NCBI GenBank assembly: GCA_002269645.1
Contig: NIVC01003265.1
Coordinates: 44,258-108,257, forward strand
Origin: Macrostomum lignano
Taxonomy: Eukaryota
Direction: 5' to 3'
Length of the DNA stretch: 64,000 bases
Shown: positions 9,561 through 56,822 of the stretch, in pieces
Numbering within the stretch: the first letter of the stretch is position 1
How the letters are laid out: each line of letters opens with the position of its first letter
Position numbers and translations under genes: made by a program
The notes under the pieces: model-generated
Seen by the model: only the letters and a program-made list of their open reading frames with translations
The model's database searches: none
Told to the model about the DNA's origin: nothing

Positions 9561-31168
<21,608 letters not shown>

Positions 31169-32044: not shown

Positions 32045-35000
32045 TCAGCTCTGCTTTGCAGCCTTTTCACTCGGGCTTAGCTCCGCCGCAATCTCCTTCC
32101 AGACGGGGTCCAAACGTCGTTTGGTCGGCTTTGGCTTCGGCTTGCTGGGGTCCGCATTTTTGCGCTCCTTCGCTGGCTGCTCATTCGAGGCTGACAGACA
32201 GTGCCAGACCGCCAGCAGGGGGACGGGCAACACCGTCAGCCCTCTGATCAGCTCAATCAGCCACCACTCTGCCAGCGACCTGTGCAGCTGACTCTCGCTG
32301 AGGTTCTGCAGCGGCCCGGTCATCACGGGGCTGAGCGGGTTTCCAGTCCAGGATGGTAAAGCGAACTTCACCGAGTCCGTGACCAAGACCACCAAGCTCA
32401 GCAGCAGCAGCAGCGGAGTGTAGAAAAACCAGCAGAGCCGCCACCAGAAAGCCAGGCGGGAGAGCCGCTCGTTAACTGCAAAATATTCCAATCAGTGATG
32501 GCGCGTCAAGAACTGAACCAGCTTCTCCAGAAGCTTCTCCAGAACGGAGAAGACCACAGTGCCAATTATACTCCCGCTCTGTTGCATCTTTCGCCTAATG
32601 ATGCAAGCTCAGCCTCGAGAGAGTCAGTCTTGCATCTAACTAATGATGCAAGCTCAGTCTCGAGAGAGTCAGTCTTGTATCTAACTAATGATGCAAGCTC
32701 AGTCTCGAGAGAGTCAGTCTTGTATCTAATGATGCAAGCTCAGTCTCGAGAGAGTCAGTCTTGTATCTAATGATGCAAGCTCAGCCTCGACAGAGTCAGT
32801 CTTGTATCTAACTAATGATGCAAGCTCAGTCTCGAGAGAGTCAGTCTTGCATCTAACTAATGATGCAAGCTCAGTCTCGAGAGAGTCAGTCTTGTATCTA
32901 ACTAATGATGCAAGCTCAGTCTCGAGAGAGTCAGTCTTGTATCTAAATAATGATGCAAGCTCAGCCTCGAGAGAGTCTCTCTCGAGAGTCTTGTATCTAA
33001 TGATGCAAGCTCAGTCTCGAGAGAGTCAGTCTTGTATCTAATGATTCAAGCTCAGTCTCGAGAGAGTCAGTCTTGTATCTAATGATTCAAGCTCAGTCCC
33101 GAGAGTCAGTCTTGTATCTAACTAATGATGCAAGCTCAGTCTCGAGAGAGTCAGTCTTGTATCTAACTAATGATGCAAGCTCAGTCTCGAGAGAGTCAGT
33201 CTTGTATCTAACTAATGATGCAAGCTCAGTCTCGAGAGAGTCAGTCTTGTATCTAATGATGCAAGCTCAGCCTCGAGAGAGTCAGTCTTGTATCTAATGA
33301 TGCAAGCTCAGTCTCGAGAGAGTCAGTCTTGTATCTAATGATTCAAGCTCAGTCTCGAGAGTCAGTCTTGTATCTAACTAATGATGCAAGCTCAGTCTCG
33401 AGAGAGTCAGTCTTGTATCTATCTAATGATGCAAGCTCAGCCTCGAGAGAGTCAGTCTTGTATCTAATGATGCAAGCTCAGCCTCGAGAGAGTCAGTCTT
33501 GTATCTAATGATGCAAGCTCAGCCTCGAGAGAGTCAGTCTTGTATCTAATGATGCAAGCTCAGCCTCGAGAGAGTCAGTCTTGTATCTAACTAATGATGC
33601 AAGCTCAGCCTCGAGAGAGTCAGTCTTGTATCTAACTAATGATGCAAGCTCAGTCTCGAGAGAGTCAGTCTTGTATCTAATGATGCAAGCTCAGCCTCGA
33701 GAGAGTCAGTCTTGTATCTAATGATGCAAGCTCAGCCTCGAGAGAGTCAGTCTTGTATCTAACTAATGATGCAAGCTCAGTCTCGAGAGAGTCAGTCTTG
33801 TATCTAACTAATGATGCAAGCTCAGTCTCGAGAGAGTCAGTCTTGTATCTAACTAATGATGCAAGCTCAGTCTCGACAGAGTCAGTCTTGTATCTTACTA
33901 ATGATGCAAGCTCAGCCTCGAGAGAGTCAGTCTTGTATCTAATGATGCAAGCTCAGCCTCGAGAGAGTCAGTCTTGTATCTAACTAATGATGCAAGCTCA
34001 GTCTCGAGAGAGTCAGTCTTGTATCTAACTAATGATGCAAGCTCAGCCTCGAGAGAGTCAGTCTTGTATCTAACTAATGATGCAAGCTCAGTCTCGACAG
34101 AGTCAGTCTTGTATCTAATGATGCAAGCTCAGCCTCGAGAGAGTCAGTCTTGTATCTAATGATGCAAGCTCAGTCTCGAGAGAGTCAGTCTTGTATCTAA
34201 TGATGCAAGCTCAGCCTCGAGAGAGTCAGTCTTGTATCTAACTAATGATGCAAGCTCAGTCTCGAGAGAGTCAGTCTTGTATCTAACTAATGATGCAAGC
34301 TCAGTCTCGAGAGAGTCAGTCTTGTATCTAACTAATGATTCAAGCTCAGTCTCGAGAGAGTCAGTCTTGTATCTTACTAATGATGCAAGCTCAGCCTCGA
34401 GAGAGTCAGTCTTGTATCTAATGATGCAAGCTCAGTCTCGAGAGAGTCAGTCTTGTATCTAACTAATGATGCAAGCTCAGTCTCGAGAGAGTCAGTCTTG
34501 TATCTAACTAATGATGCAAGCTCAGTCTCGAGAGAGTCAGTCTTGTATCTAACTAATGATGCAAGCTCAGTCTCGAGAGAGTCAGTCTTGTATCTAACTA
34601 ATGATGCAAGCTCAGTCTCGAGAGAGTCAGTCTTGTATCTTACTAATGATGCAAGCTCAGTCTCGAGAGAGTCAGTCTTGTATCTAACTAATGATGCAAG
34701 CTCAGTCTCGAGAGAGTCAGTCTTGTATCTAACTAATGATGTTAGATGCAAGCTCAGTCTCGAGAGAGTCAGTCTTGTATCTAACTAATGATGCAAGCTC
34801 AGTCTCGAGAGAGTCAGTCTTGTATCTTACTAATGATGCAAGCTCAGTCTCGAGAGAGTCAGTCTTGTATCTAACTAATGATGTTAGATGCAAGCTCAGT
34901 CTCGAGAGAGTCAGTCTTGTATCTAACTAATGATGCAAGCTCAGTCTCGAGAGAGTCAGTCTTGTATCTAACTAATGATGTTAGATGCAAGCTCAGTCTC

Positions 35001-38000
35001 GAGAGAGTCAGTCTAGGACTGCAAGCTCAGTCCGCCACCAATCTAGAAAATGAATGAAAATCTCACGGCCCAGGTGCTTGAATAGAACTGTGGCCCCGGC
35101 CGGTCCAAGGAAGCTCCAGAGGGCCGCCAGCTGCATGGTGAGCAGCAGAGCGCAGTTCCAGCCCCAGGAGCTGTACAAGAAGGTGTAGATAGCGGCGCCG
35201 CCATACTGAAAGCAGAGCGGCAGGCACAGCGCAATCAGCAGGCAGAACAGCAGCAGGTGGAGGACTCCCGTCCAGTTCTTCAGCCTCGGCCAAACATCCA
35301 CCAGCGAGTCCACGCAGCAACAGAGGAAGGAGACGCAGTCGCAGACCTCGCCGACTGCGAAGCACAGCAGCGGGGCGACACTGAGTCCGGAGTTGATGGT
35401 GGACAGCACGTACGGCTGGATCTGCATGAGGATGTGCGAGTAGCCGAAGGCCTCCGGCTTCAACAGCATCGCCACGTCCGATTCCTTGCTGCTGACGCCA
35501 GCCTGAATGATCTCCTGGCAGAGGACGTGCAGCGAGTTGGCCAGGCAGTGCAGCGACAGGCTGACGAGGCTGGTGCCGATGAAGTTGTAGCCAAACGCGT
35601 TGGTCTTGGCCAGGTTGATGAGCTCCCCGGTGCTGCAGCCGGTGTTCCTGGGGAGTTTCGGGAGAGTTTTGGCGCCATCTGTGTGAGTTCTTGCCAGCAA
35701 AATCTATGGAGAGAGCAGAGACCGTTGCAGCTGCTCCAAGTCCTGGCTTGGCTAAGTTATTGGACAGCTCACCACATTACCAACTGAACAACTCACCACA
35801 TGACCAACTGAACAACTCACCACATGACCAATTTAACAACTCACCACATGACCAGCATTGTCGCGTCCACCCAAATGCTCAAATTGTTGGTCACACTGAG
35901 GCCTTTGCTGCTCGAGACGAACTCCATCAGGCCAACAAAGAAGCTGCTTCCATCGCCGTGGCAAACTGTGATGATGCAGACCACGCCGAGGGAAGCCGTG
36001 CTCGCGACGCTAAGGAAGTGCAACCAGCTGCTCAGAGTTTTCGGCTCCACCATCAGCGTGAGCAGCAGGCAGCAGTAGGTCAGGGTGAACACAAAGGTGA
36101 GCAGAGTCCAGTGTACCGGCTCCCCCATCGATGAGTCGACCCGGAAGCCGCGCCGCATTCTGCCAGTCAGCAGGTCGGTGGTGATCAGCTTCGGCCCGGC
36201 GAAATTCTCCGCAGCCTTTTCGGCGTCAACGATGCCGACCCGCTTCCACAGGTAGTGGTTTTTCAGCCCCTTCTCGCTGGAGTGCCGCTGCCGGTTCGCG
36301 TCGATCTCGCCGCAGATGCCCCAGTCGAGGTGAACTTCGTTCAGGCCGAGCTGCTGGCAGTCGCTGAGGTTGAGGTTCTTGTAAATTCGCTTCACAAAAA
36401 AGCCGCTCAGCAGAGGTGAGTTGCTGCTGTTGCTGCGCTCTCCCACGCTAAGCAGGCCGAGGCTCTCCAGCAGCACGATGGCCGTGTAGACACCCTCGCT
36501 GGCCACCACCATGTTGAGCGCCGTGTGCAGCACGCTGACCAGCAGGATGGACAGTCCGAGACCTGAATGGGATTGCCAGGCCATGATCAGATTCTAGTAG
36601 TTTCACTCTTCACCAGCTGGTGTTAACCGCTCTCTTGCGCAAGGATTTTGTCTGTAGGTTTCATAATTAATTAATTGATTACACCCGCCCTAATGGGCGG
36701 ATGTGCAACCGACAGCTCAGCCGCAGGTTTTGCGTGGCGCATGTGAAGGCTGCGTACGGCTGTTCAGTCCAAGGACTGGGGGGTCGCCACACGCACCCTC
36801 ATTTACCCCAGCTAATGCTGGCACCCATTTTAGAGCTGGGTGAACTGAAGCAATGCGGAGTTAAAGTTCCTAAGGAGGCTAAAACCCCTCACTAGGCTAC
36901 AACCCCTCACTAGGCTACAACCCCCTACAACTAGGCTACAACCCCTCACTAGGCTACAACCCCTCACTAGGCTACAACCCCCTACAACTAGGCTACAACC
37001 CCTCACTAGGCTACAACCCCTCACTAGGCTACAACCCCTCACTAGGCTACAACCCCCTACAACTAGGCTATAAACCTCTCACTAGGCTACAACCCCCTAC
37101 AACTAGGCTACAACCCCCTCACTAGGCTACAACCCCTCACTAGGCTACAACCCCTCACTAGGCTACAACCCCCTTTTCTAGGCTACAACCCCTCACTAGG
37201 CTACAACCCCCTACAACTAGGCTACAACCCCCTCACTAGGCTACAACCCCTCACTAGGCTACAACCCCTCACTAGGCTACAACCCCTCACTAGGCTACAA
37301 CCCCCTTTTCTAGGCTACAACCTCTCACTAGGCTACAACCCCCTACAACTAGGCTACAACCCCTCACTAGGCTACAACCCCCTTTTCTAGGCTACAACCC
37401 CTCACTAGGCTACAACCCCCTCACTAGGCTACAACCCCCTCACTAGGCTACAACCCCCTTTTCTAGGCTACAACCCCTCACTAGGCTACAACCCCCTTTT
37501 CTAGACTACAACCCCTCACTAGGCTACAACCCCCTTTTCTAGGCTACAACCCCTCACTAGGCTACAACCCCTCACTAGGCTACAACCCCCTTTTCTAGGC
37601 TACAACCCCTCACTAGGCTACAACCCCTCACTAGGCTACAACCCCCTTTTCTAGGCTACTTTTTTGCCAAACCCAACTGCAGGTAGCTTTGTTTAAGCTT
37701 TGTTTAAGCTACATGCAGTTGGGTTGAAGCTACAAAAAACGAAGCTTATTAAATTCTAAATCAGCACCATGGAAAACCCCTGTACAGACGAAATTATGAT
37801 CCTATCAAAACTGCAGCTAATTTATCTACCTAAAGTTTCAAAAAAGTCCAGGATTTCGTCTGTGGATAAAATGAACACGTTCGAAGCCTGGTGCTGGACC
37901 TTCACATTTCACACACTTCATAATCTCAGTCAGCTACCTGCTGAGACCTACTGCTAACTAAGAGTAGACCTGAGAGTCTCGCTACTCGTCACCAAGCACC

Positions 38001-38389
38001 CTCAGCCGAGCTCGGCACCAACCTCGGATCGCCGGGTTGAAGCTCCAGCAGCGCAGCGGGCCGAAGCGCGAGTGCTGGCCCACTGCAGCCAGCAGGATGA
38101 CTGTCGGCAGGCCGAACGCCGCCATGACAGTGAAGTAGGCCACGGAGAAGGACAGGCCGCCGTACTTGCAGCAGTAGCTAAAGTACATGTACAAGCCGGA
38201 GTTGCGGAACAGGCGCGAGTAGAACCCGAGCGAGAATCGGAGCGGGTGCCGCCAGGCCTTGCTCTCGGACACGTTCGCCTGCCACAGCTGCTCGCAGGTG
38301 CAGTGCCGGCTGTCGGCGGAGGTCTCGTGCTTCATTGGCTGGTAGTTCCTGGCATCGACTGGGCCAAAGTCGTCCTGACTGCTCTGCAT
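32045..38389 (-). CDS. Atypical SLC6/NSS (sodium:neurotransmitter symporter fold) membrane protein, ~698 aa. Exons (minus): 38389-38023, 36562-35845, 35647-35067, 32475-32045
   Basis: Phases 1/2/1 are consistent; total 2097 nt = 699 codons. SLC6 landmarks: YCCKYGGLSFSVAYFTVMAAFGLP..LLAAVGQHSRFGP..CW..NPAIRGLG, LDWGIC, WVDATMLVMWNTGCSTGELINLAKTN, FWWRLCWFFYTP. Confidence 0.85.
32595..35015. repeat. 41/45-nt minisatellite TGATGCAAGCTCAGTCTCGAGAGAGTCAGTCTTGTATCTAA(CTAA) filling SLC6 intron 3 (~2.4 kb)
   Basis: Direct reading. Confidence 0.95.
36680..36885 (+). mobile_element. Probable SINE-like fragment in SLC6 intron 1
   Basis: GCTGGCACCCATTTTAGAGCTGGGTGAACTGAAGCAATG resembles, by recall, the conserved central domains of widespread metazoan SINE superfamilies. 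No full element or TSD seen. Confidence 0.35.
36885..37660. repeat. ~18-nt minisatellite CTAGGCTACAACCCCTCA with interspersed variants
   Basis: Direct reading. Confidence 0.95.
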
Positions 38390-39361: not shown

Positions 39362-39965
<604 letters not shown>

Positions 39966-40011
39966 GTCTATCTCAGTTTCCCAAGCAACCTAACCACCCC
40001 TCATCACTCAG

Positions 40012-41712: not shown

Positions 41713-56822
<15,110 letters not shown>

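What the first reader, a model, noticed from the sequence alone, without database searches (positions are those of the whole stretch)
32045..38389. Intact SLC6-fold gene lacking the canonical ion, substrate and gate residues (pseudo-transporter or transceptor candidate)
Seen: a gapless hand alignment of TM1 from the N-terminal Trp gives SRLFRNSGLYMYF in place of GFAVDLANVWRFP, losing the Na2 Gly/Val, Na1 Ala/Asn, the substrate Asp/Gly position and the outer-gate Arg. TM3 YYN becomes ALN (LeuT Y108-equivalent lost). TM6 ATQIFFSLG becomes TMLVMWNTG (Cl-/Na1 Gln and Ser and the gate Phe changed). The 698-codon frame, splice sites and all TM segments are intact. Known: these residues are near-invariant in DAT/SERT/GAT/LeuT, and atypical SLC6s such as Drosophila Bedraggled exist. 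Inference: selected for a non-transport role or a novel ion-independent substrate.
Basis: partly seen in the sequence, partly recalled or inferred. Interest (0 to 1): 0.7.

Follow-up and report, generated by a model that had tools for sequence, protein, structure and literature searches.

The report
Degenerate SLC6 transporter-like gene, flatworm
This is a real, intact and apparently transcribed gene of the flatworm Macrostomum lignano. It keeps the 12-helix shape of a neurotransmitter/amino-acid transporter but has lost essentially every residue those transporters use to bind sodium, chloride and substrate and to open and close. It therefore cannot work as an ordinary sodium-coupled transporter, and what it does instead is unknown.

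Summary
The window is M. lignano contig NIVC01003265.1. On the minus strand, four GT-AG exons (38389-38023, 36562-35845, 35647-35067, 32475-32045) encode 698 aa. These are identical to the transcriptome-derived GenBank model PAA52309.1.

The protein is a full-length SLC6/NSS homologue, but an extreme outlier:
- It scores 40 bits on Pfam SNF, against 335-718 bits for ordinary members.
- It keeps 44% of near-invariant family columns, against a median of 93%.
- Mean identity to family members is 18%, against 32%.

Three independent alignments agree on what is lost: the whole TM1 motif (SRLFRNSGLYMYF), the TM2 Glu, the TM3 Tyr, the TM6 Gln/Phe/Ser, the TM7 Asn/Ser, the TM8 Asp-Ser, and most gate residues on both sides. 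Scaffold Gly/Pro/Trp motifs are kept. AlphaFold gives 12 TMs with breaks in TM1 and TM6, and the best fold matches are DAT/NET.

An exhaustive search of 1.84 billion representatives found no orthologue. Three near-identical genomic copies give no power for dN/dS. The intact ORF (P about 1e-9 by chance) and GC3 of 85% against 47% in introns argue against a dead gene.

Best reading: a lineage-restricted SLC6-fold protein that does not perform Na+/Cl- symport, probably a non-transporting derivative. An ion-independent carrier is not excluded. The function is untested.

The parts
38023..38389 (-). Exon 1 (aa 1-122): start codon, short N-terminus, TM1a/1b, TM2 and the start of TM3. It is the only part that canonical SLC6 proteins detect by tblastn.
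   Evidence: model; tblastn with canonical SLC6 hits only 38329-37997; best Pfam SNF stretch is aa 70-153.
38180..38218 (-). TM1 core S58-F70, SRLFRNSGLYMYF, in place of G-[YF]-A-V-[GD]-L-G-N-V-W-R-F-P. Lost: the Na2 carbonyl positions, the Na1 Ala/Asn, the substrate Gly/Asp position (now R62) and the outer-gate Arg (now M68).
   Evidence: Gapless phmmer alignment to GAT1; custom HMM; per-sequence comparison; AF2 helix break at residues 61-62.
38135..38161 (-). Retained TM2 scaffold motif G77 G78 L S F S V A Y85. The family has GGGAF..PY, and this Tyr is the Cl--site Tyr.
36563..38022 (-). Intron 1 (GT-AG). Contains an 18/38-bp tandem array at 36876-37659.
35845..36562 (-). Exon 2 (aa 123-361): TM3, a long low-confidence EL2 (about aa 157-273, with sequons N167 and N187 and Cys191/Cys206), TM4, TM5, EL3 helix and TM6a.
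36513..36521 (-). TM3 A137 L138 N139 in place of Y-Y-N. The LeuT Y108-equivalent Tyr is absent.
35648..35844 (-). Intron 2 (GT-AG). It splits the TM6 motif between M361 and W362.
35067..35647 (-). Exon 3 (aa 362-555): TM6b, TM7, EL4, TM8, TM9 and TM10.
35626..35873 (-). TM6 motif W353-G369, WVDATMLVMWNTGCSTG (it spans intron 2). W-x-D-A and two hinge Gly residues (G365, G369) are kept. The Gln becomes L359, the gate Phe becomes W362, and the Na1/Cl Ser becomes N363.
   Evidence: AF2 break at 365-369.
35536..35550 (-). TM7 H395 C L A N399 in place of N-x-x-T-S. The Na1/Cl Asn and the Cl Ser are lost.
35347..35361 (-). TM8 F458 A V G E462 in place of L-G-[LI]-D-S. The Na2 Asp/Ser pair is lost, and the register is uncertain by one residue.
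35281..35304 (-). Retained motif at the cytoplasmic end of TM8, L477 V D479 V W P R L484. The family has [LI]-x-D-x-[FY]-P.
35176..35178 (-). TM10 L519 at the position of the extracellular-gate Asp/Glu.
32476..35066 (-). Intron 3 (GT-AG). Almost entirely a 45-bp x about 55 tandem array (32595-35014).
32045..32475 (-). Exon 4 (aa 556-698 plus TGA stop): the retained W566-W-R-L-C-W571..TP motif, TM11, TM12, and a short Lys/Pro-rich C-terminal tail.

Best explanation
The locus is a genuine, spliced gene that is probably transcribed. It is restricted to Macrostomum lignano as far as public data show, and it descends from an SLC6/NSS transporter.

Shown:
- It keeps the 12-TM LeuT-type scaffold, including the helix breaks in TM1 and TM6 and the structural Gly/Pro/Trp motifs of TM2, TM6, the TM8 end and TM11.
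- It has replaced the residues that form the Na1, Na2 and Cl- sites, the residues that contact the substrate, and most of the gate residues on both sides.

Inferred: it cannot couple transport to Na+/Cl- as DAT, SERT, GAT and LeuT do.

My committed reading (inference): it is a non-transporting SLC6-fold membrane protein, a 'pseudo-transporter'.
- The small hinge and pocket residues (Gly, Ala, Ser) are replaced by bulky or charged ones: R59, F61, R62, W362, N363, and E462/D465 on TM8.
- These would fill the central pocket and may lock it by internal ion pairs.
- The conserved outer scaffold would be used for something else, such as binding or regulating a partner (possibly a canonical SLC6) or sensing a ligand.
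For: - Gene model and identity to the transcript-derived GenBank protein. The annotation was built from RNA-seq and transcriptome assemblies (PMC5730564).
- SLC6 homology over the whole length: Pfam SNF 40.4 bits against a 27-bit cut-off; GAT1, NET and DAT are the best PDB sequence hits; a custom family HMM aligns aa 36-666 at 144 bits.
- Fold: AF2 pTM 0.76, TM core pLDDT 80-95, 12 TMs, with breaks at residues 61-62 and 365-369. Foldseek's top hits are hDAT, dDAT and NET, with target-normalised TM-score 0.75-0.78.
- Loss of functional residues.
- Outlier status.
- Not a dead gene: no stops in 698 codons against about 20 expected (P about 1e-9); GC3 85.5% against GC2 43.7% and intron GC 47%; the ORF is intact in all three genomic copies.
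Against: - There is no direct evidence of selection. No orthologue was found. The only two differences among the three copies are both nonsynonymous, and the non-repeat introns are as conserved as the exons.
- No expression level, tissue or phenotype was found in any paper or supplement searched.
- The protein's 90% cluster holds only genome-derived models.
- The AF2 model was built with an SLC6 alignment, so the fold is partly imposed.
- Na+-independent LeuT-fold carriers exist, so losing the Na+ sites does not prove that transport is lost.
Confidence: 0.5

Rival explanations
1. It is still a carrier, with a different mechanism: an ion-independent facilitator or exchanger, or a H+-coupled transporter with a remodelled pocket. 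Fixed positive charges (R59/R62 on TM1) would stand in for the Na+ ions, as basic residues do in Na+-independent LeuT-fold transporters (ApcT Lys158, CaiT Arg262; from my own knowledge).
For: - The hinge features needed for rocking-bundle movement are kept: helix breaks in TM1 and TM6 and G365/G369 in the TM6 loop.
- The scaffold is well conserved.
- Two Arg residues lie in the unwound TM1 segment, and E462/D465 lie on TM8 where Na2 would sit.
Against: - Most of the residues of both gates are gone together: M68, L519, L138/N139 and W362 outside, and S43 and T377 inside. D479 and W46 are retained.
- The TM1 hinge glycines are replaced by Arg and Ser.
- No related protein with this pattern is known to transport anything.
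- No coordinates were available to test whether a cavity remains.
Confidence: 0.3
2. It is a decaying relic: a lineage-specific duplicate released from constraint, still with an open frame and some transcription but without function.
For: - There is no orthologue anywhere.
- Divergence is extreme.
- The two substitutions between copies are both nonsynonymous.
- No expression or phenotype record was found.
Against: - Neutral drift to about 18% identity would have introduced stops and frameshifts. None is present in 698 codons or at four exon junctions, in any of three copies.
- GC3 is 85.5% against 47% in the gene's own introns.
- Losses are concentrated in ligand and gate positions, while structural Gly/Pro/Trp positions are kept.
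- The TM pattern supports a confident 12-TM model.
Confidence: 0.12
3. It is an artefact of gene prediction or assembly: wrong exons joined, or a chimeric frame.
For: The UniRef/WormBase models of the same locus (P0003, P0004) differ. They lack exon 1 and have another C-terminus.
Against: - My model, built independently from ORFs and GT-AG sites, equals the transcript-based GenBank model residue for residue.
- The same CDS occurs on three contigs.
- The family HMM aligns collinearly across all four exons.
Confidence: 0.03

Closest known systems
Human GAT1 (SLC6A1), and NET/DAT (SLC6A2/A3) and Drosophila DAT
   Same: These are the best sequence hits among solved structures (GAT1 7sk2, E 2.6e-12) and the best fold matches (hDAT 8vby, dDAT 4xnx, NET; TMt 0.75-0.78). 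The 12-TM order is collinear. Shared features are the TM2 GG..F..Y and P....GQ motifs, TM6 W-x-D-A, the TM8-end D-x-x-P, and WW.xCW before TM11.
   Different: Identity is about 15-17%. All Na1, Na2 and Cl- ligands are replaced except the TM2 Tyr. So are the substrate-contact residues and the outer-gate Arg-Asp/Glu, Tyr and Phe. The canonical EL2 Cys-Cys motif is not in place.
C. elegans SNF-12 (an SLC6 member acting in epidermal immune signalling)
   Same: It is a precedent for an SLC6-family protein whose known role is signalling. It binds the STAT-like factor STA-2 on endocytic vesicles, and its substrate is unknown (PMC4681281).
   Different: No sequence comparison was made here. SNF-12 is still predicted to be a transporter in that review. 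Specific relatedness was not tested; no named SNF-12 sequence appeared among the top hits I identified.
Degenerate N-terminal SLC6 domains of mollusc tandem double-SLC6 proteins (Ylistrum balloti XP_060064335.1, Physella acuta XP_059161224.1)
   Same: These are SLC6 domains with partly eroded TM1, TM6 and TM8 motifs that persist next to a canonical SLC6 domain. That suggests degenerate SLC6 folds can serve as partners of working ones.
   Different: They are far less degenerate (382-468 bits on the family HMM, against 144 for the query) and they keep F-P and parts of G-x-G-N in TM1. The query shows no special affinity to them (27-40 bits, against 44-63 bits to ordinary members). The query is a stand-alone protein.
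Non-transporting nutrient sensors derived from transporters (yeast Ssy1, Snf3/Rgt2) and pseudoenzymes in general (from my own knowledge)
   Same: The concept is the same: the fold is retained and the catalytic or transport residues are lost, with a new regulatory or sensing role.
   Different: They belong to different families (APC/AAP and MFS). They carry long cytosolic signalling extensions, whereas this protein has only about 45-residue termini. Sensing is unproven here.

Membership tests
SLC6 / NSS (Pfam SNF, PF00209) | Significant sequence match to the family profile | tested here: met
   PF00209 scores 40.4 bits against a cut-off of 27 (E 2e-10). A custom HMM of 42 members scores 144 bits over aa 36-666. 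All 141 exhaustive-search hits that I inspected are SLC6. The match is weak: ordinary members score 335-718 bits.
SLC6 / NSS (Pfam SNF, PF00209) | 12-TM LeuT fold with unwound TM1 and TM6 | tested here: met
   The AF2 model has pTM 0.76, 12 TM helices, and breaks at residues 61-62 and 365-369. Foldseek's top matches are DAT, NET, SERT, GAT and GlyT. Caveat: the model was built with an SLC6 alignment.
SLC6 / NSS as Na+/Cl--coupled symporter | Na1 site (TM1 Ala carbonyl and Asn, TM6 Ser/Thr, TM7 Asn) | tested here: not met
   Ala becomes L60, Asn becomes G65, Ser becomes N363, and Asn becomes H395.
SLC6 / NSS as Na+/Cl--coupled symporter | Na2 site (TM1 Gly/Val backbone in the G-x-x-V context, TM8 Asp/Thr-Ser) | tested here: not met
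   Gly becomes S58 and Val becomes F61. The TM8 L-D-S aligns to V460-G461-E462, with the register uncertain by one residue. There is no hydroxyl or Asp pair in any register, and only E462 might supply a carboxylate.
SLC6 / NSS as Na+/Cl--coupled symporter | Cl- site (TM2 Tyr, TM6 Gln and Ser, TM7 Asn and Ser) | tested here: not met
   Only Y85 is kept. Gln becomes L359, Ser becomes N363, Asn becomes H395, and Ser becomes N399 or A398. No acidic replacement of the LeuT E290 type is present.
SLC6 / NSS as Na+/Cl--coupled symporter | Extracellular gate (TM1 Arg with TM10 Asp/Glu; TM3 Tyr with TM6 Phe) | tested here: not met
   Arg becomes M68, Asp/Glu becomes L519, Tyr becomes L138/N139, and Phe becomes W362.
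SLC6 / NSS as Na+/Cl--coupled symporter | Intracellular gate (N-terminal Arg and Trp, IL3 Tyr, TM8-end Asp) | tested here: not met
   W46 and D479 are kept. Arg becomes S43 and Tyr becomes T377.
SLC6 / NSS as Na+/Cl--coupled symporter | Na+/Cl--dependent substrate uptake | not testable with these tools
   This needs oocyte or cell uptake and current assays.
Processed or unitary pseudogene | Frame disruptions, loss of splice sites, neutral evolution, no transcription | tested here: not met
   There are no stops or frameshifts, all introns are GT-AG, and three copies are intact. GC3 is 85.5% against 47% in introns. The annotation is transcript-derived. dN/dS is inconclusive because the copies are too similar.
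Transceptor / non-transporting sensor (Ssy1, Snf3/Rgt2 type) | Extended cytosolic signalling tail added to the transporter core | tested here: not met
   The N-terminus before TM1 is about 45 aa, and the C-terminal tail after TM12 is about 45 aa. No extra Pfam domain is present.
Transceptor / non-transporting sensor (Ssy1, Snf3/Rgt2 type) | Ligand binding that triggers signalling without transport | not testable with these tools
   This needs genetics and biochemistry.
Na+-independent LeuT-fold carriers (ApcT/CaiT-type charge substitution) | Basic side chain occupying a former Na+ site | tested here: inconclusive
   R59 and R62 lie in the unwound TM1 segment, and E462/D465 lie on TM8. No model coordinates were available to test their geometry.

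The most novel reading that the evidence does not exclude
This is the first stand-alone 'pseudo-transporter' of the SLC6 family. The fold would be kept under selection while the Na+, Cl- and substrate sites are replaced by fixed charges (R59/R62 pairing with E462/D465) that lock the core. The protein would then act as a receptor or as a regulatory subunit, for example by heteromerising with canonical SLC6 transporters. That would be the free-standing counterpart of the degenerate domains fused to working SLC6 domains in molluscs.
Probability: 0.3. Interest if true: 0.7.

Novelty: new variant of a known kind. Interest (0 to 1): 0.45.

Why it matters
SLC6 transporters are among the best-understood secondary transporters, and their ion, substrate and gate residues are treated as near-invariant. 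A protein that keeps the fold after losing all of them would have three uses:
- It is a natural experiment on which residues are structural and which are mechanistic.
- It would extend the pseudoenzyme concept to this drug-target family.
- It could reveal a non-transport role (partner regulation or sensing) that canonical members may also have.

Macrostomum lignano has RNAi and transgenesis, so the question can be tested. If the gene is only a fast-evolving, species-restricted paralogue with marginal function, the finding is of local interest for flatworm gene turnover.

Tried and rejected
1. dN/dS between the three genomic copies (L001 = the window, L002, L003). The CDS is identical in L002 and differs at 2 sites in L003, both nonsynonymous (G325S, N662S). 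The 1,044 bp of non-repeat intron are also identical, and the flanks differ by 0.3-0.5%. This gives no power, so I drew no conclusion from it.
2. Orthologue search. The word-indexed search of 5.8 billion proteins found only the protein itself. Exhaustive HMMER on 1.84 billion representatives found a best non-self hit of E 2.7e-12 at 25% identity. The top hits are nematode, mollusc or unnamed sequences.
3. Expression or phenotype records. The gene ID was not found in the full-text library or in the supplements of four M. lignano papers. No paper combines M. lignano with SLC6.
4. Special kinship with degenerate SLC6 domains of tandem proteins. Rejected: it scores 27-40 bits to them, lower than the 44-63 bits to ordinary members.
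5. A second SLC6 copy in the window. None was found.
6. The UniRef name 'Piezo_RRas_bdg domain-containing protein' for the alternative models. A Pfam scan did not reproduce it, so I treat it as spurious.
7. Literature on Bedraggled, SNF-10 and 'pseudotransporter'. Nothing usable was held. The SNF-10 primary paper is not in the library.
8. Subfamily placement. I did not attempt it, because identities of 15-24% to all members would make it a long-branch exercise.
Full report
**What is there**

The window matches Macrostomum lignano contig NIVC01003265.1 (assembly GCA_002269645.1) at 100% identity over the 26 kb compared. On the minus strand, six-frame translation and splice-site inspection give a four-exon gene: 38389-38023, 36562-35845, 35647-35067 and 32475-32045. 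All introns are GT-AG, and the CDS is 698 codons plus TGA. The ATG at 38389 is the first Met after an in-frame stop about 17 codons upstream.

This model is residue-for-residue identical to GenBank PAA52309.1/PAA57832.1, 'hypothetical protein BOX15_Mlig004806g1, partial'. That annotation was derived from RNA-seq and transcriptome assemblies, not from ab initio prediction (PMC5730564). The exon structure therefore has transcript support, although I found no expression level or tissue information.

The same gene lies on two further contigs of this partly duplicated genome. One has an identical CDS. The other has two substitutions, both nonsynonymous.

**Is it an SLC6 protein?**

Yes, but only barely by standard measures:
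- Pfam SNF (PF00209) scores 40.4 bits (cut-off 27), in two fragments. Ten other SLC6 proteins score 178-718 bits, and ordinary full-length ones score 335-718.
- The alternative UniRef model, which lacks exon 1, is not recognised as SNF at all.
- Among solved structures, the best sequence hits are GAT1, NET, DAT, GlyT2 and B0AT1, with E values from 1e-12 to 1e-7.
- An HMM built from 42 full-length SLC6 proteins aligns aa 36-666 collinearly at 144 bits, covering all 12 TMs.
- An AlphaFold2 model built with that family alignment has pTM 0.76 and pLDDT 80-95 in the membrane core. It shows 12 TM helices, with helix breaks at residues 61-62 (TM1) and 365-369 (TM6), where SLC6 transporters are unwound.
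- Foldseek's best PDB matches are hDAT, dDAT and NET, with target-normalised TM-score 0.75-0.78. Because the alignment was made of SLC6 proteins, the fold is partly imposed by it.

**The observation**

Three alignments agree on TM1: phmmer to GAT1, gapless over 106 residues, the custom HMM, and hmmalign. The family motif G-[YF]-A-V-[GD]-L-G-N-V-W-R-F-P reads S58 R59 L60 F61 R62 N63 S64 G65 L66 Y67 M68 Y69 F70. The alignment is anchored on both sides by retained residues, W46 and F52 upstream and C-x-K-x-G77-G78 downstream.

TM6 A-[ST]-Q-I-F-F-S-L-G reads T357 M358 L359 V360 M361 W362 N363 T364 G365. TM3 Y-Y-N reads A137 L138 N139, or shifts by one residue. No Tyr is present either way.

- TM2 Glu becomes L100.
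- TM7 Asn and Ser become H395 and N399 (or A398).
- The TM8 Asp-Ser falls in V460/G461/E462, with the register uncertain by one residue.
- The TM10 gate Asp/Glu becomes L519.
- The N-terminal gate Arg becomes S43.
- The IL3 Tyr becomes T377.

Retained positions are mostly structural: W46, F52, G77, G78, F81, Y85, G93, P95, G104, Q105, G110, P119, G123, G125, Y148, W353, D355, A356, G365, G369, N378, G412, D479, G511, P576 and the WWRxCW motif.

In numbers, the protein keeps 44% of the columns that are at least 80% conserved, against a family median of 93%. It is the lowest of 43 sequences at every threshold. Its mean identity to the others is 18% (maximum 24%), against a median of 32%. Even the most atypical relatives retrieved keep F-P and parts of G-x-G-N in TM1.

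**Is it alive?**

No orthologue or closer paralogue exists in the word-indexed 5.8-billion-protein collection or in an exhaustive HMMER scan of 1.84 billion representatives. The best non-self hit there is E 2.7e-12 at 25% identity, and the top hits are nematode, mollusc or unnamed sequences. A between-species dN/dS test is therefore impossible with these data.

The three genomic copies are too recent to help. The non-repeat introns (1,044 bp) are as identical as the exons, and only the flanks differ, by 0.3-0.5%.

The indirect evidence favours a maintained gene:
- There are no stops in 698 codons, where shuffles of the same sequence give about 20 (P about 1e-9). The other five frames carry 6-36 stops.
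- GC is 85.5% at third codon positions, against 43.7% at second positions and 47% in the gene's own non-repeat introns.
- The losses are concentrated in liganding and gating positions, while helix-packing Gly, Pro and Trp residues are kept.

A sequence drifting neutrally to 18% identity would not keep these properties.

**How it most likely works**

What is shown is an SLC6 scaffold without Na1, Na2, Cl- or substrate-contact residues and with most gate residues on both sides replaced. It follows that canonical Na+/Cl--coupled symport is not possible.

The step beyond that is inference. Small hinge and pocket residues have become bulky or charged (G to R62, G to S64, A to L60, V to F61, F to W362, S to N363). 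Two Arg residues on TM1 face a TM8 segment that now carries E462 and D465. I therefore think the central pocket is filled and perhaps locked by internal ion pairs, giving a non-transporting 'pseudo-transporter' that uses its surface for partner binding or sensing.

There are precedents for non-transport roles. C. elegans SNF-12 is an SLC6 member that binds STA-2 in immune signalling (PMC4681281). Mollusc proteins also exist in which a partly degenerate SLC6 domain is fused to a canonical one.

The main rival is an ion-independent or differently coupled carrier in which the Arg residues replace Na+, as in ApcT and CaiT (my own knowledge). The retained TM1/TM6 breaks and the G365/G369 hinge are compatible with that. 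I put roughly 0.5 on the non-transporting reading, 0.3 on the alternative carrier, 0.12 on a functionless relic and 0.03 on an artefact.

**Comparison and novelty**

The protein is an SLC6 family member by descent and by fold. It fails every feature that defines the family's mechanism (see the membership table). It is not a sensor of the Ssy1 or Snf3/Rgt2 type, because it has no added signalling tail.

I found no description of this gene, and no literature on fully degenerate SLC6 proteins in the library searched. I rate it a new variant of a known kind.

Interest is moderate. The pattern is striking and M. lignano is experimentally tractable. Against that, the gene is known from one species, with no orthologues, no expression data and no functional evidence, and flatworm lineages are rich in fast-evolving genes.

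Noticed in passing
window 32595-35014 and 36876-37659: The introns of the gene are dominated by tandem arrays: 45 bp x about 55 copies in intron 3, and 18/38 bp x about 41 copies in intron 1. Array length differs between the three genomic copies, whose gene spans are 6387, 6386 and 6180 bp.
   Followed up: partly
window 39420-39973 and 41821-42463: A (TGTC)n array of about 139 copies and a 42-bp x 15 array lie in the roughly 4-kb region between the 5' end of the SLC6-like gene and a divergently oriented RhoGEF/WD40 gene (about 42477 to beyond 48431, plus strand).
   Followed up: no
window 30854-31168 (+): An ORF fragment has an SH3-domain match (SH3_9, E 7e-6). It corresponds to a 442-aa gene annotated on the L002 copy (L002 17264-19399) but not on the L001/window copy.
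   Followed up: partly
P0003/P0004 (UniRef A0A1I8I5N7, A0A1I8HS22), same locus: Alternative 662-aa models lack exon 1 and read into a different C-terminus. They are named 'Piezo_RRas_bdg domain-containing protein'. A Pfam scan finds neither that domain nor SNF in them.
   Followed up: yes
P0007 (Ylistrum balloti), P0008 (Physella acuta), P0006 (Caenorhabditis bovis): These are tandem double-SLC6 proteins. In the two mollusc proteins the N-terminal domain is the more degenerate one: 468 against 760 bits, and 382 against 526 bits, on the family HMM. Its TM1, TM6 and TM8 motifs are partly eroded.
   Followed up: partly
window 35648-35844 (intron 2): Intron 2 interrupts the TM6 signature between M361 and W362. 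Downstream of the donor site, the motif CAACTCACCACATGACCA(A) is repeated three times on the plus strand (35789-35850).
   Followed up: no
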